A stretch of 64,000 nt of DNA, taken from the NCBI GenBank assembly GCA_964188305.1, contig OZ076894.1; one strand, 5' to 3'. The notes under the pieces were generated by a model. It was not told the DNA's origin and searched no databases. It worked only from the letters and a program-made list of their open reading frames with translations. Positions 2,363-62,631 of this stretch are shown here, one piece after another (positions within the stretch are counted from its first letter, which is position 1; each line of letters begins with the position of its first letter). Source of the DNA: Podarcis bocagei. Taxonomy: Eukaryota. The position numbers and the translations under genes are program-made.

Positions 2363-3010
2363 TTCTTGGAAATAATTGTGGCTTTTATGCCCTGCCGTTT
2401 TCAACACCCTGCAGGAGGATTCCATCCAGTGTGGCTATGCACTTTCTGCCTACCAATGTGTATTTTTATATAGGTACATGCATTCTTTTGACAGGGAAAA
2501 AACGAGCCAACCAAGGAATGCCTGAAGCACGAAGAACAGCCCTATGCAGATGATTAACATCTGGGTACAACACATAGGAGTGAGAGCATAACTTGCTTAC
2601 CAGGAAGCAAGACCTGTTTTGCTCAGGTGTTTTTACTTCTGGGTAACGTTTAGTATTGGGAACTGCAAAAATACTTTTTATGACCAGAGAAAAACCTAAC
2701 CTGAAAAATAAACAATAAACGAATATACACCGAGACGGAAAAGCTAACTGAAATTAAATAGGAAGCTCATCAGATGAAGAATTTTTCCATTGTAATCTAA
2801 CTCTAGCCCACACAGCGTAACCTAGATTTCGACTGACTATTCCCACCCCAATAAGTGCAGTATTCAGAATATGATTAAAAGAATAACTGAGTAAGAGAAA
2901 GTAAACATGACATTTTGGTGCCTGGCATCTACCAGGTAGAAGTGAAGTTTTAATATTAAAGTGAATTCCCCTGAGCAGATGAAAAAAATTATTGCATTCC
3001 GCATACATTT

Positions 3011-4377
3011 CAGTGGTTGCTGAACAACTCCAGGCACGCCTGGAAGAAGCGGACCATTTGGATCCCTTCCAGTCGGGATTCAGGCCTCATCATGGGACTG
3101 AAACTGCCTTGGTCGCACTGGTTGATGATCTCCGGCGGGCTAGGGACAAAGGTGAGAGCTGTTTCCTAGTTCTGCTGGATCTCTCAGCGGCGTTTGATAC
3201 CATCGACCATAGCATCCTTCTGGACCGTCTTGAGGGGCTGGGAGCTGGGGGCACTGTTATACAGTGGTTCCGCTCCTTCCTCCTGGGCCGTGTTCAGAAA
3301 GTGGTGGTGGGGGATGAGTGTTCAGACCCTTGGGCCCTCACTTGTGGGGTGCCTCAGGGTTCTGTCCTCTCCCCCATGCTTTTTAACATCTATATGAAGC
3401 CGCTGGGAGAGATCATCAGGAGGTTTGGGCTGGGTGTTCATCAGTATGCGGATGACACCCAGCTCTACCTCTCTTTTAAATCAGAACCAGTGAAGGCGGT
3501 GAAGGTCCTGTGTGAGTGTCTGGAGGCGGTTGGAGGATGGATGGCGGCTAACAGATTGAGGGTGAATCCTGACAAGACAGAAGTACTGTTTCTGGGGGAC
3601 AGGAGGCGGGCAGGTGTGGAGGATTCCCTGGTCCTGAATGGGGTAACTGTGCCCCTGAAGGACCAGGTGCGCAGCCTGGGAGTCATTTTGGACTCACAGC
3701 TGTCCATGGAGGCACAGGTCAAATCTGTGTCCAGGGCAGCTGTTTACCAGCTCCATCTGGTACGTAGGCTGAGACCCTATCTGCCTGCGGACTGTCTCGC
3801 CAGAGTGGTGCATGCTCTGGTTATCTCCCGCTTGGACTACTGCAATGCGCTCTACGTGGGGCTACCTTTGAAGGTGACGCGGAAACTACAACTAATCCAG
3901 AATGCGGCAGCTAGACTGGTGACTGGGAGCGGCCGCCGAGACCATATAACACCGGTCTTGAAAGACCTGCATTGGCTCCCAGTACGTTTCCGAGCACAAT
4001 TCAAAGTGTTGGTGCTGACCTTTAAAGCCCTAAACGGCCTCGGTCCAGTATACCTGAAGGAGCGTCTCCACCCCCATCAGTCTGCCCGGACGCTGAGGTC
4101 CAGCGCCGAGGGCCTTCTGGCGGTTCCCTCACTGCGAGAAGCAAAGCTACAGGGAACCAGGCAGAGGGCCTTCTCGGTAGTGGCGCCCGCCCTGTGGAAC
4201 GCCCTTCCAGCAGATGTCAAAGCGATAAACAACTATCTGACATTCAGGAGACATCTTAAGGCAGCCCTGTTCAGGGAAGTTTTTAACGTGTGACATTTTA
4301 CTGTATTTTTGGTTTTTATGGAAGCCGCCCAGAGTGGCTGGGGAGGCCCAGCCAGATGGGCGGGGTATAAATAATAA

Positions 4378-16934: not shown

Positions 16935-17070
16935 TTAGAAGACATCTGAAGGCAGCCCTGTTTAGGGAAGTTTTTAATGTTTGATGTTTTATCGTGTTTT
17001 CAATATTCTGTTGGGAGCCCCCAGAGTGGCTGGGGAAACCCAGCCAGACGGGCGGGGTATAAATAAATAA

Positions 17071-17128
<58 letters not shown>
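16935..17128 (+). mobile_element. L2 3' end fragment with (TTA)n tail
   Basis: Closely matches the 3' end of the element at 4248-4427. Confidence 0.8.
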
Positions 17129-17129
<1 letters not shown>

Positions 17130-19149
17130 AGGCCTCTGCAGTTATCCAGAATATCGTACAAAACAATTACATATTTTGAACTTCACTTGTGGCACACACC
17201 CCAGAAAGGATGGCAAGCAGTGACTTAGATTAGCCGTTTGCAAACTTTCTACCACCATCAAGCACTTTCTTATGTTTAGTCAAAATCACATATTTCCTTG
17301 TGATGTGAACCTTTTGCCGGAGCAACAGAAAATAAATTAGCTCCGTTATCTTTTGAGCCCTTCAAATATTTCTGGATGGCTGTCACACAGTTTCTTAATC
17401 ATCTCTTTGCTAGGCTAAACATACCTGGATAGTTGAGTCCAAAGGCTAGCACTTGGGAACAGGGCCAAGGACTTTCTGTTCTTTGTAGCTATTTAGGGGC
17501 TTCCCAAGTATTTGGCCTTTTGAGGTTTGAGGATATCCAGTGCAAATGTCATGATATTTGTTATATTACATTTGCTTTATCCTTACGTTGACTTTTTAAT
17601 GCTATATTTGTATTTTGTTTATCTGTTTGACATCTGATGTCAAAATGCGATCAAACAACTACACTACTTTCCAAAGACATCTGAAGGCAGCCCAGAATTG
17701 GGAAGTTTTTAATATTGGACGTTTGCTGTGTTTTTATGATGTTGAAAGCCACCACCCAGTCAGATGGGTGAGGTAAGAACAATAATAATTTAATAATAAT
17801 AAATTACACCAAGAGAACCTCAGTTATGGGGCACAAAAAGTACCATTAATACTCAAATGATCCTCAAAACAAAATACTCTTCAATGACAACTGCTGGAGT
17901 AAATGGCTTGCTACAACCTGCTGGGCATCAAACCCGCAGTGTGCATTTGATAACATAGTTTTAGATCCCCTACAGTAAGGGTGGAGCACCTTTGTGGTTT
18001 GGTTGGGCAGATTTTTATCTCCCTCCACACCACACACCAACTTTGACAGGTGGGCAGGACTACCTGTCAATCATCTGGCAGTATCATTTTGCCAGATGAT
18101 TTGGCCACCTGTCCAAAGTAGGACCACGGAGGTGATAGCGAACAAACAAGACTGACCTTTTTTTCCTGCGGGGTTCAGGTGTGTGAGAGCTCTCTATGGG
18201 AACTCATGACCTCAGGTATAGGGCATGTGGGTGTGGCTTTTGAATAACAACCTCAGTGTACTACAGTTCCCCTGCCCTTGCTCAGCTGGTTAGATATTTT
18301 AAGTTTTAGGAATTTCTGTTGTTGCCAAAGCTTATTATTTGACGTTACCATGTCTTCTTGCTGAATCTTACCATATGAGACTTTAAAAAATAGTCTAAAT
18401 AAATATATCAAACTTGAGAAGCATCAAGAACTACAGTAAACAAGAATACTGCTAATTTGCATTACTCGGTTGCATGTTGACAGGATTTGATCACCATCTG
18501 CATTGCAATCGCACACTGTTCTCTTCTCTCATCTCTTATATTCATTTCCCCTTTGTCCTTTGGCTCACCCCACTCACTGCACCATTAAAATGTGCTACAT
18601 AAAATCAACACAGCCTTTAAAAATCCACCCTAGCTGTGAAATGCCATAATCAACCCACGGCCCAGTCCTATGTGTGGGAGACCTGCTACTCTGGAAGCTG
18701 ATTTTCAAACACATATGATATTCCCTTGTAGTTTCAAATTTTCCAAAAGAGATACTGGTACTGAGGAAAGTATTTTTCTTTTCTTTTCAAAAGAGATACA
18801 GAACAGTTATTTATACAATCAAAGAATGTTTACATCTCCTCTAAGCAATGGTGAAGAAATGTTGATTACAACCATTAATGTGGGGGCATAGTAAATCTGA
18901 GCTTGCCACAAAACAAGAAACTTCATTTCTTGGGGAGAATTGACATAACTCAGCAGAAACATTGTGAAGCATTGTCAAGAGTTACTATAGTACTTTCTAA
19001 TCTGAATGATCCCCAACTGCCTGTGTGTGTGGTTTATAGTCAAAGCATCTTTTCATCCATTTTTATTTCATCCCCCTCCATGGTAAACCTTACAGAAATC
19101 TGATCAGCACTCTTCAATTGCTCTATTCTTTTTCATGCATTTACTACTA

Positions 19150-19389: not shown

Positions 19390-19630
19390 TATATGAGGTT
19401 TCTGGGTGCCAGACTTCTGTAATCCCTAGATTCACCAAGTGTTACAATTTAATCTAGATTTGGTCTGTTAAACTAATCCCTAATCCCTGGATCCAGATTA
19501 AGCCAAAATAGCTTTCTGTGTTGAGGTGAGCACCTGAGTGATAGGCCATTAAGAGAAGAAAGGCTCAAAAGGCTCCTGTGAAATAGAAAATGGGTGCCCC
19601 CCCAACAGATAAAGTCAGAGTTTAGGAGTA

Positions 19631-19842
19631 CAGTGGTCCCTCGGGTTACAAACACCTCGGGTTACAGACTCCACTAACTCAGAAGTAGTTCCTTGGGTTA
19701 AGAAATTTACCTCAGGATGAGAACGGAAATTGCATGGCAGCGGGAGGCCCCATTAGCTAAAGTGGTACCTCAGGTTAAGAACAGTTTCAGGTTAAGAACG
19801 GACCGCCAGAACGAATTAAGTTCATAACCAGAGGTACCACTG
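19631..19842. mobile_element. Tigger/pogo-like MITE
   Basis: TIRs plus TA TSD; inverted relative of 5937-6416 and 30485-30719. Confidence 0.8.
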
Positions 19843-20015
19843 TAATGTGAGCTGGATGCAAAATGCTACTGGCTGGAAAGGCAGAGTCAGAGCACAATGT
19901 TTGCTTTCCGCTTGAATCCAAGGCTGTGGTTATGGGAGAAGCATGACCCTTTTGGGATGTTAATGCTTTGAACCTCTCAATCATAGGCTCAGGTTGTATT
20001 TATGTGTAACTAAAC

Positions 20016-21260
20016 CAGTGTTTCCCAACCTTTTTTGGGCAAAGGCACACTTGTTTCATGAAAAAAATCTCGAGGCACACCACCATGCCAGATGGGGAAA
20101 GGTCACTTTTTACCTATGTAAAAAAAAATAAAAAAATAGTAACAGCATAGAAGGTAATGGTAAGCTATAGCTTGTTTAGCTTATACCTAAATCCGACACT
20201 GATTGGTCTCCCTTCCAAGGCACTCGAGGTCCCACATGAAAGCGAGCCCCCAGCAAGGCCTCGACGGCCTGCAAGGCGCTTCCCCTTGCGAGTGGGAAAC
20301 GGACGGGCGGCGGCCCGAGCACGACCTGGCGCCCTCTCAGCTCAGCGAGCACGACCTGAAAGCTCTGGCCGCCTCCCTGCACGCCCTCCCGGACCTGGAG
20401 TACGGCGGCAGCAGCGCGCCTCCTTCGACGGGCCCCGACGGCAACCGCGAGCGGCCCCGTCGGCGGGCCTCGGCGGCGGACCTCCTGCAGGACAGCTCCG
20501 GCTTCGCGCCGGACTACGAGGGCTTCGAGTACCGGGGCGACCCTTACGAGGAGGTGGAGCCGCTGCGGAACCTGCCCGCCTTCGAAGCGTGCTCGCCGGC
20601 CTCGTCCGAGTCCAGCATCGACATCTGCTTCCTGAGGCCCGTCCACTTCACCAACGAGCCCAGCAGGACGGAGCGCACGCTGCAGCCGCTGCCCAAGAGC
20701 GCGGCGCCGACGCCGCAAGCCAGCGGCACCTACAAGCGCGAGGTTTTCCGCAGCAAAGGCAAGCAGCTGAGCCGCTCGCTCAAGGAGTTCCCGCGCAGCA
20801 GCGGAGGCGGCGGCGGCTCCGAAGGCATCGCCAGCACCAGGCTGTACAGCACCCGCAGCAGCAGCGGCAGCCGCCTGCCGGCCCCGACGGAGAGGGGCTT
20901 CCCGACCCACGGCGCCCCCTCCGCCGCCTCCCGGAGCTCCCAGCGGCACCACTTCCCGCCGCCGAGAGGAGCGGGCGACCAGCCCAGCTTTCTGGAAGTA
21001 AGGAGAGCAAAAGGCAAGGGCAAAGGCGCTTCCTAGCCAGGGTCTAAGCGTGCCTATGTGGGGCACGTTACAGCCCCGTGACGTCAGCGCCACGCAGGCA
21101 GCCAGGCAGGCAGATGGCGAGAGCCCCGCGCTGGGCGGCCTCTCCTCGCCGCCGCCGCCCCGCCTCTCGCCGCCCGACTCATCCGCCTCCCTCCCACGGC
21201 ACACCAGGCAACGTCTGGCGGCACACTAGTGTGCCGCGGAACACCGGTTGGGAAACACTG
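20016..21260. mobile_element. Non-autonomous hAT transposon carrying a captured host exon (Pack-hAT / Pack-TIR)
   Basis: Perfect 15-bp TIRs CAGTGTTTCCCAACC (20016-20030) and GGTTGGGAAACACTG (21246-21260); perfect 8-bp TSD AACTAAAC (20008-20015, 21261-21268); subterminal GGCACAC repeats at both ends; no transposase. Confidence 0.92.
20220..20997 (+). pseudogene. ARHGEF33: Transposon-captured copy of an ARHGEF33-like coding exon (C-terminal region), frame intact
   Basis: Translation contains CSPASSESSIDICFLRPV, LQPLPKSA, LSRSLKEFPR, RLYSTRSSSG and FLEVRR, recalled as matching the ARHGEF33 C-terminal region; acceptor ctcccttccAAG|G at 20219/20220 and donor GAA|GTAAGG at 20997/20998; no other exons of this gene in the window. 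Confidence 0.78.
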
Positions 21261-21304
21261 AACTAAACCATACAACTGGTTTATGTGTAACTAAACCATA
21301 CAAC

Positions 21305-21663
21305 TGGTGCTGGAGGAGACTCTTGAGAGTCCCATGGGCTGCAAGAAGATCAAACCTCTCCATTCTGAAGGAAGTCAGCCCTGAGTGCTCACTGGAAGGA
21401 CAGATCCTGAAGCGGAGGCTCCAATACTTTGGCCACCTCATGAGAAGAGAAGACTCCCTGGAAAAGACCCTGATGTTGGGAAAGATGGAGGGCACAAGGA
21501 GAAGGGGACGACAGAGGACGAGATGGTTGGACAGTGTTCTCGAAGCTACAAACATGAGTCTGATCAAACTGTGGGAGGCAGTGGAAGACAGGAGTGCCTG
21601 GCGTGCTCTGGTCCATGGGGTCACGAAGAGTCGGACACGACTAAACGACTAAACAACAACAAC
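21305..21663 (+). mobile_element. BovB (RTE) LINE 3' fragment
   Basis: Translation WCWRRLLRVPW...YFGHLMRR...RRRGRQRTRWLD; (CAA)n tail; approximate TSD aaaccatacaac/aaatcatacaac. Confidence 0.9.
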
Positions 21664-22585
21664 AAATCATACAACATAAAGGCACCACAGTCTCTGCTAT
21701 GCCTCATTCCAAAAGGAAACACGAAGCCTGGGTAAGCGCCTAGAAACCTTGGCATCTTGCACCGTTCAGAGACTGGGGTGGCAGGCAACAATATATATTT
21801 AATCAGCACGCCAAGGAAAAACAAATTGCTACAGTGAAATGAAGCAGTCCTTTTACTTGGTGAAAAAGCTGAGTGTGCCTTTTGCTAGGTTATTATTTAT
21901 ATCGTTTACAAACATAACCCCAAAAAAGACAGTTTCCTGCTCTGAGGAGCTTACAGTGTACTTTGATGAAGGAAATGGAAGAAAGGGGGAGGGAAGGTTG
22001 ACATTTGGAGTGAAAGTGAGCAAAATGGGCAGACACAAGATCTTCTCATTTGGGAGATAAATATCTACTTCTATTCTAGTAGAAGTATTAACTAAACTGC
22101 ATTAATCCACTGCCAGAATATAGGGCAACAGTTCCTGTTTGCTGAGGCGGTGATTGTGCAGGAAACATTAAATGGGCTGCTATTTTGCACTATGGGAATA
22201 CAAAAATTGCCAGGCATGCTACTGACTAGGCAGCCTTTTGACAAGTTGATGGGGGTGGGGGAAGGGTCATTGGAAAGACATAGTTGCAGAACTGTATCTA
22301 AATTTGCCCCCAACGGAGTCGAATTGCCAAATGGTAGCTCCATTTGCAGAGACAGAACGCGCTTTCTATATAGGATGTGTTGGCCTCTATATTGCGACAT
22401 CTCAAATCAAACAATTCTACAGCAATTACCCCCTTGTTTGGCAACAATTTCAACTGCTTCAATTTGAGCCCTCACTAACATCTTTGTGATTATGTTATTA
22501 ATCATAAATATCTTGATGCTGCATCTTAAGAGAAATTTAATAGAATTTGTTATCACAGATAAAAGAATTGGTACACTCTCTTGTA

Positions 22586-24454: not shown

Positions 24455-25342
24455 TGCGGGTGGCGCTGTGGTCTAAGCCACCAAGCCTCTTGGGCTTGCC
24501 GATCAGAAAGTTGGTGGTTTGATGGGGTGCAGCTCCTGTTGCTTTGTCCCAGCTCTTGCCAATCTAGCAGTTTGAAAGCACCCATGTTGTTGTTGTTTAG
24601 TCGTTCAGTCGTGTCCGACTCTTTGTGACCCCATGGACCAGAGCACGCCAGGCACTTCTGTCTTCCACTGCCTCCTGCAGTTTGGTCAGACTCATGTTTG
24701 TAGCTTCGAGAACACTATCCAACCATCTCGTCCTCTGTCATCCCCTTCTCCTTGTGCCCTCCATCTTTCCCAACATCAGGGTCTTTTCCAGGGAGTCTTC
24801 TCTTCTCATGAGGTGACCAAAGTATTGGAGCCTCAGCTTCACGATCTGTCCTTCCAGTGAGCAGTCAGGGCTGATTTCCTTAAGAATGGATAGGCTTCAT
24901 CTTCTTGCAGTCCATGGGACTCTCAAGAGTCTCCTCCAGCACCATAATTTAAAAGCATCAATTCTTTGGCGATCATCCTTCTTTACAGTCCAGCTCTCAC
25001 TTCCATACATCACTACTGGGAAAACCATAGTTTTAACTATACGGACCTTTGTTGGCAAGGTGATGTCTCTGCTTTTTAAGATGCTGTCTAGGTTTGCCAT
25101 CGCCTTTCTCCCAAGAAAGCGCCCATTTAAGTAGATAAATAGGTACCACTGCGGCGGTAACGTAAACACCATTTCTGTGTGCTCTGGCACCCGTCACGTG
25201 TTCTGTGTGCCAGAAGCGGTTTAGTCATGCTGGCCACATGACCTGGAGAGCTGCCTCCCTCAATCTGAAATCAGAGATAAGCACCGCACTCCATAGTTGA
25301 ATTTGAATGGACATAACCATCCAGGGGTCCTTTACCTTTATA
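24455..25342 (-). mobile_element. Sauria SINE interrupted by a BovB 3' fragment (~24586-25116)
   Basis: SINE halves flank BovB RT-end sequence with a (GTT) tail; TSD aaagcacccat/aaagcgcccat. Confidence 0.85.
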
Positions 25343-25891
25343 CCTTAGAACAGGTACAGGGAACCTTAAGTCGTCCAGATTTTCCAGAGATACAGTGATG
25401 GCATCTTTATCATCTAGATTCATAGGGAGGAGGTGTATAAGGAACTCCACTAAAACTTTCATTTCACCACCAGTCTCAATTTCCAGATATTATTCTGTCA
25501 CTACACAACGCATATATAAGCACTACCTTATACTGAACACTGCTACACATACATACATAAATACTAATCACTTCCTCCCAGAACACACTATGAAATCCTT
25601 TGTTTTCAGCCAAACCCTATGATATAACAGCATCTGTTCCAACTTGTTGGAGATTCCGTTTCAGGATTTACACATTTTACTCCCAGCTAGAATCGTTCCA
25701 GCACATTATCAGTGATCTACAGTCCATCCTGCATGGTAAAATCTTCCCCTAACTGGCCTTGGGTAGTTGACTTGAAGGCCCGGTGAAGCAGCCAGGCTTG
25801 ATCAAACTTTTGCTCTGAGCCAAGCAGAAAACAGGGAGGGGTCATGCATTGCTTGGATGCTGACAAGGAAGACGTCCACATCCACCTACAT

Positions 25892-26027
25892 CAGCCTTTC
25901 TCCACCTTGGGTCCCCAGGTATTGTTGAACCACAATTCCCATCATCCCTAGCCAGCAAGGCCAGAGTTCAGGGATGATGGGAGTTGTAGTCCAACAATAT
26001 CTGGGGACCCAAGATTGAGAAACACTG
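25892..26027. mobile_element. hAT-type palindromic MITE
   Basis: TIRs plus 8-bp TSD acctacat/acctagat; same family as 1451-1588. Confidence 0.78.
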
Positions 26028-41570: not shown

Positions 41571-44500
41571 GTAATAATAATAATAATAATAATAATTTAT
41601 TTCTACCCCGCCCATCTGGCTAGGTTTCCCCAGCCACTCTGGGCGGCTTCCAACTGAATATTAAAAACAATACAGCATCAGACGTTAAAAACAGGGCCGC
41701 CTTCAGTTGTCTTTTAAAAGTATACTTGTGTTGGAAAAACAGCATTAGGAGAACATATTGGATTCCACTCATAATTCTGTAATCAGATTTTTAGTCAGCT
41801 GTAATATTAAATATTTTCTGCAGAATAGTATACATAGTACTTTTATATTTCTTCTCTTAAAAACATAGGATTTGTGACACTGGGCACTTTTATAAAGCAA
41901 ATTCACTTACCTTTCAAATCGTTCTGTTGTCAGCTGCCTTTTCACAATATCATAATCAGCCTGCAGCTGTGCAAGTTTATTTCGAGTTATTGAAACTTCC
42001 CTATTAACGCTCGTTCTAAAAATATTGCAAACAAAGAAAGTTCTTAACAATTGCACAGTTACAGATGGAATCTTATAGGAACTTTAAAAATAGCGGCAAC
42101 AAGGCAGCTAAACAAGGAGCAAGAAACAACAACAACAAAAACCCCATATACGCAGACATACAAATGTGTACACACAAATGCAAACACACACAATGAAGAT
42201 ATTTCTCAACTGCAAGTTTGTAACTATTATTGGGGAAGATTCTTATCAAGGTCAGTCCAGTTAAAGTATTATGGTTGGAGGCAGAGTCAGCTCAATATGG
42301 AACTTAAGACCAGCTCACAACATTTGCTCATGCTGCTAATTCCTTCCATATCTTTTGAGATTTCAAGTGTGAGAAATCAGGATCTGAATCAGAAACCCAG
42401 GGCTACATGGGACTGCACTGAGTACCCCAAACATCTAGAGCAGGGGTGGCCAACTTCCAAGAGACTGTGATTTACTCCCACTATAAAAAAACTGACAGTG
42501 AGATCAAACCCATCAAAGTTGTTGAGCGTTTGTTGTGGGAGAATGAGCCAAAGTTGTTGAGCTTTTTTGGGGGTATTGGGGTTCCAGGGACACCCCGTGA
42601 TCGACCTGTTGGACACCCCTGATCTAGAGGGAATTTAGCACTCATGTTCACATGAATCAGTCTCTAAAGCAGTTTCACTAGTTCCTTTAATTCACCATGG
42701 CTGAAGTCAACATCTGACCCTATGAATGGATGTGCAGTGAGACAGTACTACAAAATCACTGTTAAAAGAACATATGATGCTACCCTTAATTCCAAGTAAA
42801 TGCCATTATCTTTGGGCGCAAGTCTTGGAGGACCGAGGGCTGAGACAAAAATAATTAAGACTTAATTATTCCATCTGCATAGTTTCCAGCAACTAAGTTA
42901 TATAGTTTGTGCAGAATGGTGCTAGAAATTTAGGATTTTATCAGGTGAAAATGGTTTTTTATATATACAGCTAGGTTTCTCATGAGGCCAGATATCTTTG
43001 CATGAAGTTATAAACAGTAGCTTTAAAATGTTGTAAGAATAGTTCTGAACTTTACAAACATACAATTTACTCTCCGAGAGTGTTAACTTGTCCTTAAGTA
43101 GCTGTATTTCTGAATCTTTCTCATGGGTTATCAAATGATTCTGAAAATCTTTGTCCCTGCTGGTAGACAAGAGTGTTTCCAAGTTCTGTATTGTAAGCCG
43201 CTCACTGGACAATTGTTTTTTTAACAGTTCTGTTTCTGCTCTTGCATCTTCACATTCTGATATTACCTAGAACATAAAAACAATTCATTCTAATTAAGAG
43301 TTTCAGGTTAAATATTAAAGGTCTTATTCATAGGCATCCTTTCATATAGGCAAATTCTATGCAGATGCTTAACTTTATGTTCCTTCAACAGGTTTAGGTA
43401 GTAGTGGCCTTGTTTGCATGTCACATTAAATCAAATTACAGCTTACCAAGACCAAACAAAAGTGTTGGCTCCCTATTACACCTGCTTTGTTCCTCTTTGG
43501 GCTAAGATAAGGTTTGGCTTAACATGCTGTCCAAACCCTTAATTGAAATATGTAGCCAAGACTTGTTCTTTGCTTCAGATCTTGCTTAATGGGAAGACAC
43601 CTTAACCAGTAATGCAGCCAGTATCTGAATATTTAACCATGGTTAAGTATAAACCAGAATGCATCACCATGGTTTGAAGCGGGATTGAACTTACTCTGAT
43701 TAAACACTACAACTGGTCCGTCTTTCACTTTTAACTTATCTTAAGATTCAAGCCAATATTTCTTAATTTGAGGAAGTTCACATAAAAGAAGACTCGTGTC
43801 CTTGCCTCTGTGAAATGTTGGCAGGTCCTCCTAAACACTGTGGGATATGATGTAGGCACTGCAGGGGAAGGCGTAATTGCTCATTTGGTCTTGGATCTGA
43901 GCTAAGTGAACACATGGAAGTTCGTGGAATGTTTCCCACTTCCTCCTCCCCATAGTAGCCTCCCATGCCCATTTCTGAAGAGCTCTTCCTCCACTCTCTG
44001 AAAAGGGATTTCAGGGGCCACAGCTTGCTGCAGGGGAGTGGAGGGGAAACTTGCCTTACTTGCACTTTCTCAAGTGAACGATCTTAGGGTTCAAATCCTT
44101 GGGTTTACATTTTAGTGTCACATTTGACCAGTGGTACCTCTGGATGCGAATGGGATCCGTTCTGGAGCCCCGCTCACATCCTGAAGCAAACGTAACACGC
44201 AACTGCGCGTCTGTGTGGGTCGCGTTTCGCTGCTTCTGCACGTGTGCGTGACATCATTTTGAGCGTCTGCGCATGCGGCGAAACCCGGAAGTAACATGCT
44301 CGCTGTGGAGCGCAACTCAAAAATATTCTTCCCGAAGCTACTTCAACCCGAAGTATGACTGTATTGAACTTATTTAGATGTGTTGTGCTAAGAGCTAAGT
44401 TCTTCCTCTTACCCTCTCAAACTCCATAGATTTGGATGTTAACTGACGTGAGAGACTTTCTTTGCTGGACTCCAGTTTGGCACACAGATCTCTAACAGAA

Positions 44501-45887
44501 ACCACATCAACAGAGATGGAAGACTTTTCTTCTTTTTCACGTTTGAGACTCTCCTCTAGTTTGGCCATACTTTTTGCCATTGAAGAGATCTGTGATTCAT
44601 AAGCTTGGTGGGCAATGATATGCTAAGTGAAAGACAAATGCAACTCTATTATTACATGCAGGCATGCGACAGTCCGTCTCACTGCACACTAACCAAAATT
44701 CAAGCTCTCTTGATCACTGAGTTAATATAAAGAAAACAACCCCCACCAACTTGTTTCCCCCCTCCAAAATACACTTATAATCATTTATAAGCCCTAACGT
44801 GCGAGAACAGAAATAGCTCTGAAATTAGTGTTCCCATGAGCTGAAACGAATTATTAATTAACACACCTTGTCCTCTGCAGAAATCTCCAATTAATGCAAA
44901 GGTGTATGATTAAGAAAGCACATTAGGAAAAGGGACGAGGTAATAAAGTTCAGCTAGTGTCAGTAATTACCTCCTGAATTTCTTTTTCCAGTAGTTCCGC
45001 TCTCTCTCTAAGATGCCGTCTCTCAGTATCAACAGAAAGGAGTTCCAGTCGTACAGAGCTGCTTTGCCCCTCAGCTTGATGGGCCTTTACTTCCCAGCTT
45101 TCAGCTTGGCTATAGAGCATCTGGAACTTTTCCAACAGCTCCTTGTTTTCTCTTTCCTAGTTCAAAGCAGAAATATATACCATTGAGCAATGAATCACTG
45201 TATCAAATGCTTTTTACCCACAAGAAATCATCACATTGCTTCACTACGCATGGTAGAAGAGTTTGACCCTGAACTTGTCCTCTTCTCCATATTTTACTTG
45301 CACCCCAACTCCCACTTCTCTCCTTCCTCTTAAATAAATCATATTTTTTACATCCACATCTTTGTTTACAGTGAGGCTGAGTCCTTGAGTTAGAATCTCA
45401 AAGCATTTAAAGCGGATGTTGCTTTTACAAGTTGATACAAATTCTGATGATTACACATAAGAAGGGTGTCATATTTTATGCTTTGTCTGTTGTATAAATT
45501 TTCAAGGATTAAGGGGGGCGGGAATGGTCTTTTGCTATGATCCAAATGTATGCACACATAAAACCTGTAGCTCCAGCATGTGTATAAGTTTTTAAAGCAT
45601 TTTGGAAGTTTGGTGTAAATAGATCTTTAAAGCAGAACACACAGAAACCCCAAACTCTTTCTCACTCTAACTGAACATAAAAAGCTATCTGCTGATTCAA
45701 AATGTGAGATACAGAAAGATTCCCTTTCAGAAGAACTCATGTTGCTCAGAGGTCTCTGGGATATATCCTTTGTCTTTGCTGTTTAAGGAAGTTTTTAAGG
45801 ATGGATGTTTTATCGCTTTTTAAATTATTAGTAATATTCTGTTGGGAGCCACCCAGAATGGTAGTGGAAACATAGCCAAATGGGCAG

Positions 45888-45947
<60 letters not shown>

Positions 45948-48900
45948 TTGCTACAAGTAACAAATTGCATGCAGTAGGAATCTGCAAGTTTGAGATATTC
46001 TGAATAAGATTTTGATTTTTAAATCATTTTAAGTACCTTTCACAAACAGAATTTTAAAAACAATGCTGTGCTACATTACACGATAGGCTTTTCATGGACT
46101 ATGTTAATTGCAATCACACTGAACACATGCAGTCTGTTACTGGCTTCAATTTAACAACCTGAGAGTGGGCATGACTCCAGCCCTTTGCACGGGGCTTGAA
46201 AGCTAGGGCTCCAATACTCAGTACAGTGGAACCTCTATTTGCGACCATAATCCATTCTGGAGGTCCGTCCAGAGGTTGAAACGGGTCGCTGGGAGAGGCG
46301 CTGTTGTGCGCGGGCGGTGATTGCCCGCTTCTGTGCATGTGCATGAACAGCGGCAAACCCACCAGTTACTTCCAGGTTTGCCGTGGTCGCGGCTTGGAAC
46401 GACAGTAAGAAGAGGCGGTGGTAAGTAGAGGTTCGACTGTAGTGTGCATGTCAACTGCTGAAAGAAAGCAGGAAGTCCCTAGCTACAAAACCTAATATCC
46501 TGCTGTATTGCCTGCCTAGTCAGGTCTTGAGATGCAGCTTCTAAATGCAAAAGCTCTACCCGGCTTGCAACTTCTGTTGTAGCCAATAAAAGAGGCTGCA
46601 GTGAGTGCTTGGTTGGTGTGTGTGTATGTGTGGTGTCCACAGCAGTTGCTCTGGTTTGCAAGTGTGCTGATGGGCCCAAAAAGATTAGAGACCCCTAGTT
46701 TAGCATTATGTTTGAATGCAGGCATTGTGCTGGCAGTACAACTGTTAGGCTATATCAAACAGTATTAATATCGAAATCTGTACCTGAAGCCAAATTGTCA
46801 CTTTTGGAATGTATAAGCTGAATGTTTATTTCATGTTTAGTTTTAATAGTTTCCAGCCATCTCCACCTCTGCAGCACTCCGCTTGTGGGTTGATGCTAGG
46901 CCATGCCTGATCTTAACTTTTAAAACATGATACACCTGATTAATAAAATATTCATGGGAACTTCCAAATGCACTTCCTCACCTTTGAGGCCATTAAACTT
47001 TCAAACCTGGAGACTTCTGTTATGTAATTATGAACTCTAATTTTCATTTCTTCTTTATCACGCAATGCTGCTTCCAGTTCAGATGAGATTGCCTATTTAG
47101 ATGATAAACCATTACATATAATATTACATGCAAATAAAAGAAGGCTAGCTCTCATTTGGTAACCCTGTGCCTGAGCTGTACCAGACTTCAGGCTTCAGGT
47201 GTATATGTACTTCTGCATAGAAAAGAAATTCCCTATACATAAGAGATCAGGGAAACACTAGTTTTCTATGTTTTGATTTTAAATAAAGGAGCATTCTATC
47301 ATGCAAGTCCCCCATCTGCAGTCTGAAATGAAAAAAGCCCAGACAAAAATTAACTACCCTAAAGGGAGAACTTGCCCAATAATGGCTAGATTCTAACTTA
47401 ATGTTGTTTGAACAATCACTTGATGGCTATTTTAAAATCTTACACTTTTTACGGCTAAATGTAATCCGAAGAAAACATGTAAAGAAATACAGTTCCAGGA
47501 TAGAAAATCTGGACACGTTTAAATCAGCACCCCCTAAAGTAAAAAAATATAGATTGAATGTAATGCTGCCACTCTTAACAAACACACCAGTTAAAATTAT
47601 CCAAGAGCTACAAATCACATAAAATGTAATTTCAGGTACCCAAACATTATTTAAAGCAATTGTGATATGTATTATTATGAACTATTGTACCTGATTTTCT
47701 CTGGCCATTGTGGATAGATCATCCTGTAATCTTCTGTTCTCTTTCAAGGCCATTTCTTTCACCCTGCTGACTTCACCAAGCTCAGAATGTGCTGCCTCGA
47801 TCTGGCGACGGACGCTGGCTAGTTCTCGGTCTTTACCGCTTAAGGCATCCTTTAATTGGCTAGCAAATGGGGGATTTGGAAAACCTTAAACAGAATTTAT
47901 CTTTTTGCATTATATAAATCTATGTAACAACTACATTCCAGTAACTAAGATGAATCATCTCAAGTGTTTTTAACTTTGCATTAGATAGTAATGATAACAT
48001 TATTGTACAATTCCATCTTTGCAGTTTCTTTATTAGCAACTTGATCGCCAAGCATTATGTCTGAAATTGTGGCACAGCACTATGATTGGTAACATGGGCC
48101 ACATAATAATAATAATAATTTGTACCACCAAGTTATAGTTTGTTTTAACCATCTAGTAAGCCAAGACTTGGCCCAGATGTTCAAACTGCAGTTTGCTTTG
48201 CATAATATTAGTTTGCTGTTCTTCTACTTACCCTGCAAATACTCAGTTGCTATACTGAATTCCTTCGTAGCATTTGAGTATTGGCAAGGCACCATCAATT
48301 ATTATCATTGGTTGGCTGTGGAAAAGATCAGGGAACATTACATTTTCCTCCTTGGAAATATTTTGGCATGCTCCTGAGCAAAAAAACAGCCCTCCACCGA
48401 TTCTTATGTAAGGTGCACAGAATTTAAAGTACATTTGTAAGTGCTGAATTAGGATAATTGTAATTGCCTTAGGTTTCCCCCCTCCCCCAAATGGCCATAT
48501 TTTAGCCTGCTTCAGAGGAACCATCTTCTTCACGTACAAAGGTTCAATTATAAGTATATTAGCTTATTAAAATACTTTGATTGCTATAAGATGAAATTGC
48601 AGAGTCAAAAGTAATAATTTTCATTACTATTACTTACTCTAAGGACGACTCTAACTGAGTAAGAGTTTGTCGCAAATTGAGGATAGTTTTTTCCTATAGA
48701 AAGAAACATGATGGCAAAGATTATTGGTTTTACATAATTCACATCAACCGCACTAATAGGTATGATCAACAAGTGAAATACAAATATACAGCATAATACA
48801 GTACTGTTACCAGTCATTCACTAGCAGTCTCTTGTAGTTTAATATTTAAGAGTAGCTGAAGCGAAAAAAATTGGGTACCTTCAGCTTACTAATGGCCAAT

Positions 48901-51900
48901 GATATTCAATATTCATTTGCATTTATTTATTTATTTTCCTTTGGACTCCATTTTTCTTTTGGCCATCACTACTTATGGCCTGAAGGGACTGAAGTGTGAG
49001 GTTACTGATATACCACATACCTTCCCAGGAAAAAAATGTGGCCTCTTGTAACCATCCTAAGTTCATAGTTTCTTTTCACAATGCTGACAGCACATGATTC
49101 TGACAGTAAGGCACAGAGAAACTGGAGAGCAGAGGTGGAAAAACTGTTGCACAACCCTTCCCCTTTTCACATTTACTTCAAAGTGCTTTTCCTTTCCCCT
49201 ACTCTCTCCTGCCTAAAATGAAAGCAGTAAGGGAGCATATGGGGCATGTGTCAGCATTTCTGCTCCTACTGCTTCATGCCAGCAGTCAGAAAGCTGGGGG
49301 AGAAGGGAGGAAAGAAATACGCGGAGAAGGTAAAGCTGAAAAGATCTCGGCAGCAGTTTCATTTTATAATTTTTATTACTAAATACTCATCTATTAATTC
49401 AAGCTTCTTTGTATGCATTAGATTGTGATCTCTTCAGAAGTACTTATAGGGCTGCTGGTTTTGGTGACTGCTGAAACTTAAGACTATAAACAATTTTTCC
49501 CCATACTCATTTTTTTTAATCTTTAATGTACAGTTTGATTTTTTATTATGTTTTAAGGAAGCTATTGACAGTTACTAATTTTCTTCAGTTCATAATTCTT
49601 TTGTTGTCTTTTATCAGTATGCACCATTCAAGACTTACAAGTCCTGACCTGGATCAAAAGTCAGGTAAGCAGAGTACAATAGTAGTACAATAGGCCCCCT
49701 CCTCCCAACTCCAGCCCATGTGTCCCCCTGATGTGTCTATTTCATGCCCCGTGTACATACCTTATTGGCTAAATTGTCATCTAGATAAGCAACTCTTTCT
49801 GTCTTTTCATCTACACTTTCCTGGAGGCTGTCTTTTTCCTTAGCCAAGACATTAATTGTACTTCTGAGCACACTGATGGTCTCATCCTGTGCATGGTGCT
49901 TATTACTGAATTTACCTGAAAATAAATAAATACTGTTTGAATTATGAAGAGCAGGGGCTCCCAAAATGTGGTCTCCAGACTACATTCAGGGGGGCTTCAG
50001 CATGTCTGTGGATTTGTGGTTGAAGATGGGAAACAGTATGTTCATTGCAATGAAAAGTCACATTTATTTCAATTGTATTTTAATTGCTTCTTTTATATCT
50101 TATTTTGTATTTTATTGTACTACAATAGGAATCTATGGAAAACAATAAAATTTAATTTATGAGAAATAAAAGCAGCAATAAAATGCATTGAAAAAACTAT
50201 ACGGAATCTAGAACAGCACATTACAATTGATACAAAAGGCAGAAAAATAATTAAGCAGTTAGCAAAGACTCCTAGCAATTTTCAAGCAGTCCATGGGGCA
50301 AAACGTTTAGGGATCTATTGATGTAGAGCTTAAAGATGACAGCTAATGTTGTGTGAGCAGACATTCACTCATGTAATGGAACTTTTCAAGCAGTCCATGG
50401 GGCAAAAACTTTAGGGATCTATTGATATAGAGCTTAAAGATGACAGCTAATGTTGTGTGAGCAGACATTCACTCATGTAATGGAACTTCTCCTTCCACCT
50501 GCCGCCTTATCTCTGACCCCCCTCACCCAACAATATCTCTGACCCCCTCACAGAACAATGTTCTGTGCCAAGAGTTAAACTAGTCTCAATCTCTTGACTT
50601 TTCAGATTAAGTAGTTAAGCCGTAAATTTTTCACTCTAAGAAATAAAACAGCATTCACCTGTTTTTTCTTCTAGCAATAAAATTTCTTCTTGAGCCAAAT
50701 GAAGTTCATCATCTTTAAGAGCCAACTGATGCTGCACTTCATCTAAAGATTTTTGTATCTGTTCATTTAGTAGTCTGCAGAATTGATATCCATTTTGGAG
50801 GGAGGGGGGAAACAGGTGCAGGTTTTTAAATGTAAATAAGTTAGAATATGATAAGCACAACCTGAAAACACTGCAAAGCACAGAATTATGCAGCAAAGGG
50901 AATGACACTTTCGAATGAGCTTACAAAAACAGCAATTAGTAGCTGTACCTTTTAAAGCTTTTAAAAAACAGCCTCAGAAAACTAAAACCATGCATCAGGA
51001 TATATCAGCTAGAAATGCAGAGACACTGAACATTATACTTTTAAGGAATCCAATCTTTTATCTCCTGAAATTGGGGCACTGACACAATTTGGGGCTTAAT
51101 TCGAACCAAAGCACAGCCGAAGCCTCTTGCTTAATGAAATAACTGGACTGAACCCTAGGATGTGTTAAGTAATACTAAATTGTCTTCAAGCATATTCAGT
51201 GTTCCTTTCCATCATTACTAAGCAACTGGAATGTCCACATATTATTTTGAATTAAGGAACACAGCTTCCAATATGACTTTCAGGCAATTATGGAGCCTGC
51301 ATCTCTATTTAAGGTCTGAAAATTGATGCAAATATTTCCTGTAAAATGACATAAATTAATAGATTTGAGCAAGGCACCAATAAGATACTAAATAAATGGC
51401 TGAACTTACTGAAGGGAGTTTATTTCTGTTTTAAATTGTGAAGCATCTTCAGACAACTGAGACAGCTGATGAGACTTAATATTTGATTCATCTTCTAAGC
51501 AGACTATTTTGTTTTTTAACAATGAAATAGTAGTTACTTGATCAAGATGTTCAGTCTCCAACTGCAGCAGAAAACAACACACAAATATTATTTTCTGAAT
51601 CTGCTAAGAGCAGCATTTTTCTTGAGAAAAAAAATTAAGTATTTAAAAAGCTAAGCAAAATCCTAATAAAGACCAGTTCACTCAAATTCAATAAAAACTG
51701 CAAAACTACAGCTGTAATCTTAAGCTCCTTAGAATCATAGTGTTGGAAGGGACCGCAAGGGTAACCTTGTCCAACCCCCTTCAGCGCAGAAATCACAGCT
51801 AAAAGATCCCTGACAATGTGGCCATCCAACCTCTGATTAAAAACTAATGAAAGAGAGTCCATCACCCTCTAAGGTAAACTGTTTTAGTTTTTTAGTTTAG

Positions 51901-53410
51901 GCCCAGTTCTCCAGTCTGTTAAGGTAATCTTGAATCCTGATTCAATCTTCTGAGGTATAAACTACCCCTCCTAGTTTGGTGCCATCTGCAAATTTGATAA
52001 GCACCCCCTCATTAGTGAACTCCACCAAAATCTTTTAGTTGTTAAGGCGCAATGTACCGGCAGTAAAGCTCACAATAATGGAGCTGCCATCAGGAAAAGG
52101 AAATTGAAAAGGAATTGCTAAAAGTTCATACGATGTCTATCGAAAACCTGGTCTTGCAAATGATTGTGAGAAGTAAACGGACAAAAGCCATGGTCTCAAT
52201 CATAATTTGAATAGTCAACACACAAACAATGACATTCCATCACTACGCATTAATAAATTCTGATGCCAGCAAGTATTTAAATCACTTACTCTGTGAACAG
52301 TGTTTTCCAAGTCTGATATTTCCTGTTCTAACTTTGATTTTTCATCCTGATGGACCTTATGAAACAAAGAAAAACAACTCATCAGAGGGCATTGTTTAAT
52401 TGTCTGATTAACCTTTGAGCATCTGATCGTCTAGGGAGCATGGGAATTAGGAGACATAAAGAAAACTGCACCTACTCTCTATGCCTTTAGAACACTGAAC
52501 TTGGCTAATATATGTGCTATGTGGAAAGGTGAGGCAGGAAGAACAGACACAGAAGGCATGGGTTTATGTCAGGGCTGGAGTCAAAAATCATGACAGCAAG
52601 CAAGAAGCAGAGTTTATCAGAGAAGTTAACTCTTTATTTAAAGAAATGGTATACAACTCAGCAACACTTCCCAGCAAGTCCTGCCCCTATAGAGCAGCTG
52701 CCAGGACTGAATGTCCCCACCTTCAACCTCCTCTAAAGCTCCCCCTCTGCTGGATGTTTCCCAAGCAGCCTCAAACTGCATCTAGGCATCTCTAATCTCT
52801 GCTCCACTCTATGCATCATTCTGTGTGTCATTGGAGACAAGGGGGCTCTTTTCTCCAAAAGGGGGGGGGGCAGGACATCACTTTCGAGCTGCTGCTGCTT
52901 TTGACTGGCTCTGCCCTGCCTCCATTTGTTTCCTGCAGGTTCGACTGATAAAGAATTCCTTGGGAGCAGAGTCTGGGTGTCAGTTGTTGAAGCCTCTCCT
53001 CTGCTCCTGATGACTCTGCTGCTGGTTCCATAGCAGCTCACATGGATACTCACACAATGTTAATATTAACAACAATAGAAGCAGCGCTCCCCCCCCCCTT
53101 AAAAAATGTTTAGGGGTGCTCTCATTTTGACTCAAGAAAATCACCATTTTATAGTTCAAGTTGGGAGAAATAAATACAGTAAATGGACAAAAGTACAAAG
53201 ATTCACAAAATGTTTAGGGGTATGCGTACCCCTGCATCCCCCCAGAAAAAAGCACTGCATATATGGGTCCAGAACACTATATATATATGGGTCCAGAACA
53301 CTAGAAGTATTATGTGCAAGATAGCAGCTTATTGACTTCATCTGTAGCATGGTTTCCCCCCCCCCAAAAAAAAACTGACGCTCCAAATAATAATAATAAT
53401 AATAATAATA

Positions 53411-53455
<45 letters not shown>

Positions 53456-62154: not shown

Positions 62155-62631
62155 CTTTGGAGACAAAATCATTATTCTTTTAAAATGATTTAGTGTTGCT
62201 GCTGTAAATGCCTGGCCAGAACTTCTCGACTTAATACATAAGGATATGGGACTGTTCTAGGGTTGCGATGATTTCCAATGAAAACACTCATCATACCAGA
62301 AATTATCCTCAATACCAGTCTGATGTATGGACCATTTGTGAATGTGTTACCAGAGAGGCTGTGATAGCATGCAGGAAGGGTCCTCCTCAAGTGTTCTAGG
62401 GGCCTGTCAAGTTCATCAAAGCCACACATGCCAACACAACAGAGGTAAAGTGCAATGAGATTAAGAATAAGTTTCTTTGGAAAGGAAACTGAATATTAAT
62501 AGGAATCTCTTCTTAGGAAACTGCCTTGGGGTTTGCTGTGGAACTGGTGATGCTCATGCACAACGTTTTATCATTGTAATCACCAAAATGTCAGCTAGGA
62601 TTCCCCCACAATTAACTGGGATTTCCTTTTA

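What the first reader, a model, noticed from the sequence alone, without database searches (positions are those of the whole stretch)
20016..21260. Pack-hAT: a hAT DNA transposon carrying a complete, in-frame ARHGEF33-like exon with its splice sites
Seen directly: perfect 15-bp TIRs, a perfect 8-bp TSD (AACTAAAC; 8 bp is the hAT signature), GGCACAC subterminal motifs (20044, 20074, 21198, 21220) and a perfect 20-bp palindrome gcggcacactagtgtgccgc (21218-21237). The interior is not transposase. It is a very GC/CpG-rich 778-bp stop-free exon (20220-20997) bounded by a polypyrimidine-AG acceptor and a GAA|GTAAGG donor. From recall, the peptide matches the post-DH C-terminal region of the RhoGEF ARHGEF33, which in human is unlinked to CEP135/CRACD. 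Inference: the retained intronic flanks mean capture happened at the DNA level (gap repair or template switch, as for plant Pack-MULEs), not by retroposition. Perfect TIRs/TSD and intact CpGs suggest it is young, and it may belong to a mobile family spreading a spliceable host exon around a lizard genome.
Basis: partly seen in the sequence, partly recalled or inferred. Interest (0 to 1): 0.92.

Follow-up and report, generated by a model that had tools for sequence, protein, structure and literature searches.

The report
Lizard hAT transposon carrying ARHGEF33 exon
A 1,245-base cut-and-paste (hAT) transposon with no transposase gene carries a genomic copy of one whole coding exon of the wall-lizard gene ARHGEF33. 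It appears to sit at roughly 7-17 copies per genome in related lizards, a well-documented but not unprecedented case of a vertebrate transposon picking up and spreading a host exon.

Summary
The perfect 15-bp inverted ends, perfect 8-bp target duplication, GGCACAC motifs and 20-bp palindrome are all where stated.

**Cargo.** The interior 20161-21050 is a DNA-level copy of the penultimate coding exon of Podarcis ARHGEF33: 778 bp plus 59 and 53 bp of flanking intron.
- The peptide is 95-97% identical to Podarcis ARHGEF33.
- Homology ends at the same two points in three Podarcis genomes.
- The junctions have 4-bp and 1-bp microhomology.

**Not the real gene.** That gene is compact (18.6 kb in P. 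muralis) and none of its other exons is in the window.

**The arms are a real transposon.** A second element with the same arms, a different interior and its own 8-bp duplication lies in a P. muralis ARHGEF33 intron.

**Copy number.** Contig depth in two other lizard DNA runs puts the cargo at about 17x and 7-9x single-copy depth. The arms belong to a family of tens of thousands of copies.

**Age and expression.** Five changes are shared by all cargo copies and two are private to this one, so it is young. No spliced or appreciable RNA was seen.

This scan already found the same 1,245-base chimera on another piece of this genome. It is a new member of the known Pack-TIR kind, unusual for size and copy number.

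The parts
20008..20015 (.). left copy of the 8-bp target-site duplication AACTAAAC
   Evidence: identical to 21261-21268
20016..20030 (+). 5' terminal inverted repeat CAGTGTTTCCCAACC
   Evidence: I3
20016..20164 (+). left arm of the non-autonomous hAT backbone (AT-rich, GGCACAC at 20044 and 20074)
   Evidence: 98% identical to the left arm of an independent family copy in P. muralis, L003 9867-9714. Contig depth is 1e5-1e6 in two DNA runs.
20161..20164 (+). left capture junction, microhomology TAAG shared by arm and parental intron
   Evidence: three-way comparison
20165..20219 (+). 3' end of the parental ARHGEF33 intron (with the microhomology, 59 nt of parental intron from 20161). It includes the end of an older high-copy repeat (to 20201) and the acceptor AG.
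   Evidence: loose ends at 20201
20220..20997 (+). complete penultimate coding exon of ARHGEF33 (778 nt, 259 codons plus 1 nt)
   Evidence: 95-97% aa identity to Podarcis ARHGEF33. It equals L003 exon 17049-17816. GC3 is 0.91.
20998..21050 (+). first 53 nt of the parental downstream intron, with donor GTAAGG. The right junction at 21050 has 1-nt microhomology (G).
21050..21260 (+). right arm of the hAT backbone. It is GC-rich, with TGACGTCA at 21079-21086, GGCACAC at 21198 and 21220, and the palindrome 21218-21237.
   Evidence: 92% identical to L003 9237-9016; very high contig depth
21246..21260 (-). 3' terminal inverted repeat
   Evidence: I3
21261..21268 (.). right copy of the target-site duplication
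21261..21308 (.). context: the target lies in a 28-bp tandem duplication that includes the 5' junction of a truncated BovB-like LINE (21305-21664). The hAT insertion is therefore the youngest layer here.
   Evidence: D7/D8

Best explanation
This is a Pack-TIR of the hAT type.

**Capture.** A non-autonomous hAT element consists of a 149-nt AT-rich left arm and a 211-nt GC-rich right arm, with 15-nt TIRs and subterminal GGCACAC motifs. Its interior was replaced by about 886 nt copied from the host's own ARHGEF33 gene: the penultimate coding exon with 59 and 53 nt of intron. The copy was made from genomic DNA, by template switching during double-strand-break repair or replication. This step is inferred from intron retention and from the 4-nt and 1-nt microhomology at the junctions.

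**Spread.** The chimera kept both ends, so a transposase supplied in trans by an autonomous hAT (not identified) could cut and paste it. This copy landed at AACTAAAC in the region downstream of a coiled-coil, CEP135-like gene. Sister copies bring the cargo to roughly 7-17 copies per genome in related wall lizards.

**Origin and function.** The capture happened within Podarcis, on the lineage that shares four derived sites with P. muralis. The exon keeps an open frame and both splice sites, but most likely it is a neutral passenger. No splicing or meaningful expression was detected.
For: **Element.** TIR, TSD and motifs.

**Host origin.** ARHGEF33 homology. The peptide is 95% identical to P. 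muralis, 96.9% to P. raffonei, 96.5% to P. lilfordi, 93% to L. agilis and 92% to Zootoca.

**Boundaries.** DNA homology to the parental locus spans exactly 20161-21050 in three Podarcis genomes. Junction microhomology.

**Independent family copy.** L003 9016-9867 has the same arms, another interior and TSD CTGTAGAC. It is absent from the P. raffonei and P. lilfordi loci.

**Not the real gene.** No other ARHGEF33 exon is in the window, while the real gene has at least 13 coding exons in 18.6 kb.

**Copy number.** The cargo contig has depth 222 against 12-14 for unique flank in run X3, and 294-377 against 40-45 in X5.

**Independent assemblies.** Logan contigs L004 and L005 are 99.56% identical and run from the cargo into the right arm.

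**Family backbone.** The cargo-less joint 20085->21068 appears in DNA and RNA runs.

**Age.** Five cargo-specific and two private substitutions; four derived sites shared with P. muralis.

**Foreign composition.** A GC island of 64.5% sits in roughly 42% GC surroundings.
Against: - I did not see a second copy with its own flanks and TSD. Multi-copy status rests on k-mer depth of collapsed contigs, on contig variants, and on an unverified scan note of another 1,245-base copy.
- The left arm-cargo junction is not spanned by any listed independent contig. The contigs start at 20166, where parental and chimeric paths merge.
- No autonomous hAT or transposase was found, so the superfamily rests on TSD length, TIR form and motifs.
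- The parental exon of the window's own species was not available.
Confidence: 0.88

Rival explanations
1. Single-copy Pack-TIR made in place by transposition-independent gap filling and never mobilised. The depth excess comes from something else, such as a local tandem or segmental duplication.
For: Most animal Pack-TIRs are single-copy (Tan et al. 2021, PMC8277862). I saw no second insertion site directly. The element is single in this window.
Against: - The perfect TSD brackets the whole chimera.
- The parent is not in cis: no ARHGEF33 sequence lies within 20 kb upstream or 43 kb downstream.
- The cargo contig is 7-17x single-copy depth in two runs of two species labels.
- Variant cargo contigs exist.
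- A scan note reports another copy on another piece of the genome.
Confidence: 0.08
2. A genuine exon of ARHGEF33, or of a paralogue, that happens to be flanked by transposon fragments.
For: The exon has an intact open frame and both splice sites. CpG count equals that of the parental exon.
Against: - Full-length lacertid ARHGEF33 proteins hit only this exon in 64 kb, although neighbouring exons lie 1.6-1.8 kb away in the real gene.
- Homology to the parent stops exactly where the two halves of one known element begin.
- One TSD pairs the two ends.
- RNA depth is about 0, with no splice joints.
Confidence: 0.02
3. Assembly chimera that joined a transposon and the ARHGEF33 exon.
For: Repeat-rich surroundings. 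The left junction is not seen in the listed independent contigs.
Against: The cargo-to-right-arm junction is present in independent short-read contigs from several runs: L004 to 21097, L005 to 21066, X16 to 21079 and X5 to 21076. Five organism labels and ten studies hold most of the stretch. The TSD is perfect.
Confidence: 0.02

Closest known systems
Animal Pack-TIRs, especially multicopy Pack-hAT-N8_XT of Xenopus tropicalis (Tan et al. 2021, Nat Commun 12:4280, PMC8277862)
   Same: - A hAT non-autonomous element with its interior replaced by host DNA.
- Microhomology at the breakpoints.
- The parent lies at a distance.
- The chimera was amplified by transposition.
- The cargo is GC-rich, as reported there for multicopy cases.
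   Different: - The cargo is a whole 778-nt coding exon with both splice sites (about 886 nt), against a median of 224 nt and a 291-nt 5'UTR piece in the frog example.
- Estimated copy number is 7-17, against 3 in that example.
- Only 4 of 370 Pack-TIRs in that survey were multicopy.
- The paper's text does not mention lizards: a term search for 'lizard' and 'Anolis' gave 0 occurrences.
Plant Pack-MULEs and Pack-CACTA
   Same: A TIR transposon carries host gene fragments captured at DNA level with introns. There is a preference for GC-rich fragments, and the chimera is amplified.
   Different: The superfamily differs (hAT, 8-bp TSD, against Mutator 9-10 bp or CACTA 3 bp). The host is a vertebrate. 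This comparison rests on general knowledge and on the citing text.
Ssk-FB4 of Drosophila melanogaster (same paper)
   Same: A young multicopy Pack-TIR carrying coding sequence.
   Different: Ssk-FB4 carries a whole gene and has proteomic and selection support. Here a single internal exon is carried, with no expression evidence.

Membership tests
hAT superfamily (non-autonomous member) | 8-bp target-site duplication | tested here: met
   AACTAAAC in the window. An independent family copy in P. muralis has CTGTAGAC.
hAT superfamily (non-autonomous member) | short TIRs (about 10-25 nt) beginning CAG/TAG | tested here: met
   15-nt perfect CAGTGTTTCCCAACC
hAT superfamily (non-autonomous member) | target consensus nTnnnnAn | tested here: inconclusive
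   The window TSD fits at position 7 only. The P. muralis copy's CTGTAGAC fits both positions. Two sites are too few.
hAT superfamily (non-autonomous member) | mobilised by a transposase with BED/RNase-H-like/hAT dimerisation domains | not testable with these tools
   The element has no transposase. No autonomous partner is in the window or in the fetched loci. The lizard genomes cannot be searched here.
Pack-TIR (criteria of Tan et al. 2021) | both flanking parts belong to one identifiable TIR transposon | tested here: met
   The arms match the two ends of L003 9016-9867 at 98% and 92%. The cargo-less joint 20085->21068 is present in the runs.
Pack-TIR (criteria of Tan et al. 2021) | internal non-transposon sequence with an identifiable parental copy elsewhere | tested here: met
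   20161-21050 equals the ARHGEF33 exon plus intron flanks in P. muralis, P. raffonei and P. lilfordi.
Pack-TIR (criteria of Tan et al. 2021) | multicopy class: several insertions with distinct TSDs | tested here: inconclusive
   Depth is 7-17x single copy and variant contigs exist. Another copy was noted by the scan. Distinct TSDs were not seen by me.
ARHGEF33 gene (functional locus) | DH-domain and neighbouring exons adjacent and spliced | tested here: not met
   Only one exon is in 64 kb. There are no splice joints and RNA depth is about 0.

The most novel reading that the evidence does not exclude
Wall lizards may host a recently, perhaps currently, active hAT family that behaves like rice Pack-MULEs. 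It would repeatedly swap its interior for GC-rich, CpG-island-like host fragments and then amplify the chimeras. On this reading, the ARHGEF33-exon subfamily (7-17 copies, at least 99.5% alike) would be insertion-polymorphic among individuals and species. It would be able to donate a ready-made spliceable exon to genes it lands in. Supporting leads: other scan notes report SIX5, PACS1 and RANBP9 5' ends inside hAT elements of this genome, and the P. muralis copy has a different CpG-rich interior.
Probability: 0.4. Interest if true: 0.7.

Novelty: new member of a known kind. Interest (0 to 1): 0.5.

Why it matters
Gene-fragment capture by DNA transposons is a main route of exon shuffling in plants. 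In vertebrates it is known mostly as small, single-copy relics.

This case offers several things together:
- both junctions can be read at base resolution;
- the parent is identified in several species;
- the capture is dated within one genus;
- the chimera appears to have been amplified.

It is therefore a good natural system for asking how capture happens and whether carried exons are ever used. It also warns annotators: 'ARHGEF33-like' ORFs of 266 aa in Podarcis data are transposon cargo.

Tried and rejected
- **Pfam on the cargo peptide:** no family. The region is disordered.
- **First protein search:** it could not see full-length ARHGEF33 because of the length limit. This was solved with region searches on longer queries.
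- **50%-representative search:** it gave no close relative.
- **Other squamate loci L001 and L002:** they match only the exon, at 68%, and have no TIRs. They are useless for junctions.
- **The look-up of encoding contigs for the Zootoca isoform:** not on record.
- **Earlier-findings search by sequence:** blank.
- **Second copy in the window:** none. The TIR-like site at 26013 belongs to another MITE.
- **RNA:** raw RNA-seq run X23 has about 0 depth over the exon and no joints at 20220 or 20997. Run X16, whose RNA label is a guess, has one unspliced 916-nt contig at depth 6 that reaches into the right arm. There is thus no support for splicing, and this is not evidence against it in other tissues.
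- **Occupancy of this locus in other species:** undecided. The X3 flank contig stops 2 nt into the TIR with 10 unaligned letters, which hints at an empty or different allele.
- **Idea that the P. muralis intronic hAT copy was the capture donor:** rejected as unsupported. It is absent from P. raffonei and P. lilfordi, and the family is abundant enough for a chance neighbour.
- **CpG-decay dating:** uninformative. The CpG count (101) equals that of the parents (99-101), and all cargo-specific changes are non-CpG GC-to-AT changes.
- **Identity of the neighbouring gene:** only weakly supported as CEP135.
- **Operator limits:** Read laying was given 2,501 letters.

Full report
**1. The observation**

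- CAGTGTTTCCCAACC at 20016-20030 is the perfect reverse complement of 21246-21260 (I3).
- AACTAAAC abuts both ends.
- The TIR pattern with up to two mismatches occurs four times in the window against 0.18 expected. The other two hits belong to other elements.
- GGCACAC occurs five times in the 360 nt of arms, out of 11 hits in the whole window on both strands.
- The palindrome 21218-21237 is perfect.
- The interior is a GC island: 72% GC and CpG o/e 0.98 over 20220-20997, in surroundings of about 42% GC.

An open frame by itself proves little, because three of the six frames are open for more than 275 codons. The frame 20221-20997 stands out in two ways. It has a normal amino-acid make-up, and GC by codon position is 0.66/0.60/0.91. 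That pattern marks a real coding sequence that evolved under GC pressure.

**2. What the cargo is**

The 259-residue translation has no Pfam family. It does match ARHGEF33 of birds, crocodilians, turtles and geckos at 54-67% identity, always in the region after the DH domain.

The first search could not see full-length proteins. Two region searches with longer queries brought in squamate ARHGEF33, including lacertids. Identity to the cargo is:

| Species | Identity |
|---|---|
| Podarcis raffonei | 96.9% |
| P. lilfordi | 96.5% |
| P. muralis | 94.7-95.0% |
| Lacerta agilis | 93.1% |
| Zootoca vivipara | 92.3% |

The P. muralis gene (locus L003) has at least 13 coding exons within 18.6 kb. The captured exon is the penultimate one, L003 17049-17816. 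Its neighbours lie about 1.8 kb upstream and 1.6 kb downstream. In the window, full-length lacertid proteins hit only 20221-20997. This is therefore not the gene.

**3. Boundaries and junctions**

DNA homology to the parental locus runs from 20161 to 21050 in P. muralis, P. raffonei and P. lilfordi, and from 20176 to 21049 in L. agilis. That covers 59 nt of upstream intron, the exon, and 53 nt of downstream intron. Capture was therefore from genomic DNA.

The remaining parts, 20016-20164 and 21050-21260, match the two ends of another element that lies in reverse orientation in an intron of P. muralis ARHGEF33 (L003 9016-9867). Identities are 98% and 92%. That element has the same TIRs, its own 8-bp duplication CTGTAGAC, and a different 476-nt interior. 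It is absent from the P. raffonei and P. lilfordi loci, so the family was active after these species split.

A three-way comparison shows TAAG shared by arm and parent at the left junction, and a single G at the right junction. The GC-rich right arm, with TGACGTCA at 21079-21086, is transposon backbone and not cargo.

**4. Copy number and family**

DNA runs of five organism labels from ten studies hold 69-83% of the sampled words of 19700-21560. I laid four runs on 19400-21900.

| Run | Unique flank contig depth | Cargo contig depth | Ratio |
|---|---|---|---|
| X3 | 12-14 | 222 (contig 20166-21049, 2 differences in 884) | about 17x |
| X5 | 40-45 | 294-377 | about 7-9x |

- The arms have summed depths of 1e5-1e6, so they belong to a family of tens of thousands of copies.
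- A joint 20085->21068 is seen in X3, X5 and 72 RNA reads. It is a short cargo-less form of about 263 nt.
- Loose ends at 20201 come from an older high-copy repeat whose end lies in the parental intron, 18 nt before the exon.
- Two Logan contigs from other runs (L004, L005) are 99.56% identical to the window. They run past 21050 into the right arm, so they come from chimeric copies and not from the gene.

The scan's own notes report another 1,245-base ARHGEF33-carrying element on another piece of this genome, and several hAT elements with other GC-rich cargo. I could not check those.

**5. Age**

An alignment of three cargo sequences with four parental exons gives the following.
- Four derived sites are shared by the cargo and P. 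muralis only: 20418, 20535, 20805 and 20808.
- Five changes are common to all cargo copies.
- One to four differences separate the copies from each other.
- Two changes are private to the window copy: 20662 and 20905.

All cargo-specific changes run from G or C to A or T outside CpG. The CpG count (101) equals that of the parents. Four of the six coding changes alter the protein, which fits no constraint, though the sample is tiny.

The capture is thus placed within Podarcis, and the spread came later. The target site lies in a 28-bp tandem duplication that includes the 5' junction of a truncated BovB-like LINE, itself inserted in an older repeat. The hAT insertion is therefore the youngest event at this site.

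**6. Function**

Raw RNA-seq (X23, 12% of the run read) gives about zero depth across the exon and no joints at 20220 or 20997. Another run of uncertain type (X16) has one unspliced 916-nt contig at depth 6.

The exon is 3n+1 long, so inclusion in a host transcript would shift the frame. An ATG-initiated ORF of 266 codons exists, and gene callers pick it up on short contigs (P0198, P0199). The most likely status is a neutral passenger.

**7. Comparison with what is known**

Tan et al. 2021 (PMC8277862) reported the following:
- 370 Pack-TIRs in 100 animal genomes, 208 of them hAT;
- a median captured length of 224 nt;
- 13.4% with exonic sequence;
- microhomology at most breakpoints;
- only four multicopy cases, which tend to carry GC-rich DNA and lie far from the parent.

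This element fits that class in every tested respect. It stands out by cargo size, a complete exon with both splice sites, and apparent copy number.

It is a new member of a known kind. The same chimera was already found by this scan elsewhere in this genome.

Noticed in passing
L003:9016-9867 (P. muralis ARHGEF33 intron, minus strand): A second element of the same hAT family, with TSD CTGTAGAC and a different 476-nt interior. The second half of that interior is CpG-rich (o/e 1.08) and contains GCGCATGCGC. The element is absent from the P. raffonei and P. lilfordi loci, so it is a recent insertion. Its interior may be another captured promoter-like fragment.
   Followed up: partly
window 21261-21308 and 19999-20017: A 28-bp unit (TTTATGTGTAACTAAACCATACAACTGG) is tandemly duplicated at the insertion site. 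The unit includes 3 nt of the BovB 5' junction, so the order of events is old repeat, then BovB, then duplication, then hAT.
   Followed up: yes
window 21305-21664 and 24585-24944: A 5'-truncated BovB-like LINE tail, with an inverted 95% identical copy 3 kb away. Flanking CATACAAC at 21297-21304 and 21668-21675 looks like its target duplication.
   Followed up: partly
window 19628-19849: A very high-copy short repeat (ggttaagaac-type). It has the highest summed contig depth of the stretch in all four runs and is abundant in RNA reads on both strands.
   Followed up: no
window 25880-26027: Another MITE-like element, ending in CAGTGTTTCTCAATC on the minus strand, with an internal gggagttgtagtccaaca motif. 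Its TIR is related to that of the element studied but belongs to a different family.
   Followed up: no
L003:17049-17816 versus L006, L007 and the cargo: The P. muralis assembly GCA_964188315.1 lacks 18 nt (6 codons, between GCAAGGC direct repeats) that the cargo and the other Podarcis genomes have. Small in-frame indels also occur in GGC/GCG runs. This looks like slippage polymorphism in the parental exon.
   Followed up: partly
ARHGEF33 exon in lacertids (L003, L006-L008) versus L001, L002: The lacertid exon is about 70% GC with CpG o/e 0.90-0.94 and GC3 0.91, against 54-57% GC and CpG o/e 0.3-0.4 in two other species' orthologous loci (organisms not identified). In this region the lacertid protein is only 66% identical to gecko, where other lizards are 74-79% (snakes 66-69%). 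This suggests strong GC-biased evolution of the locus in lacertids.
   Followed up: partly
window 42925-62256, minus strand: A series of coiled-coil coding exons. A feature search lists 'Centrosomal protein 135' among weak hits, and Pfam gives only sub-threshold coiled-coil families.
   Followed up: partly
window 2983-4290, plus strand: A 436-codon open frame with a reverse-transcriptase domain (PF00078, E 5e-32): a LINE fragment.
   Followed up: no
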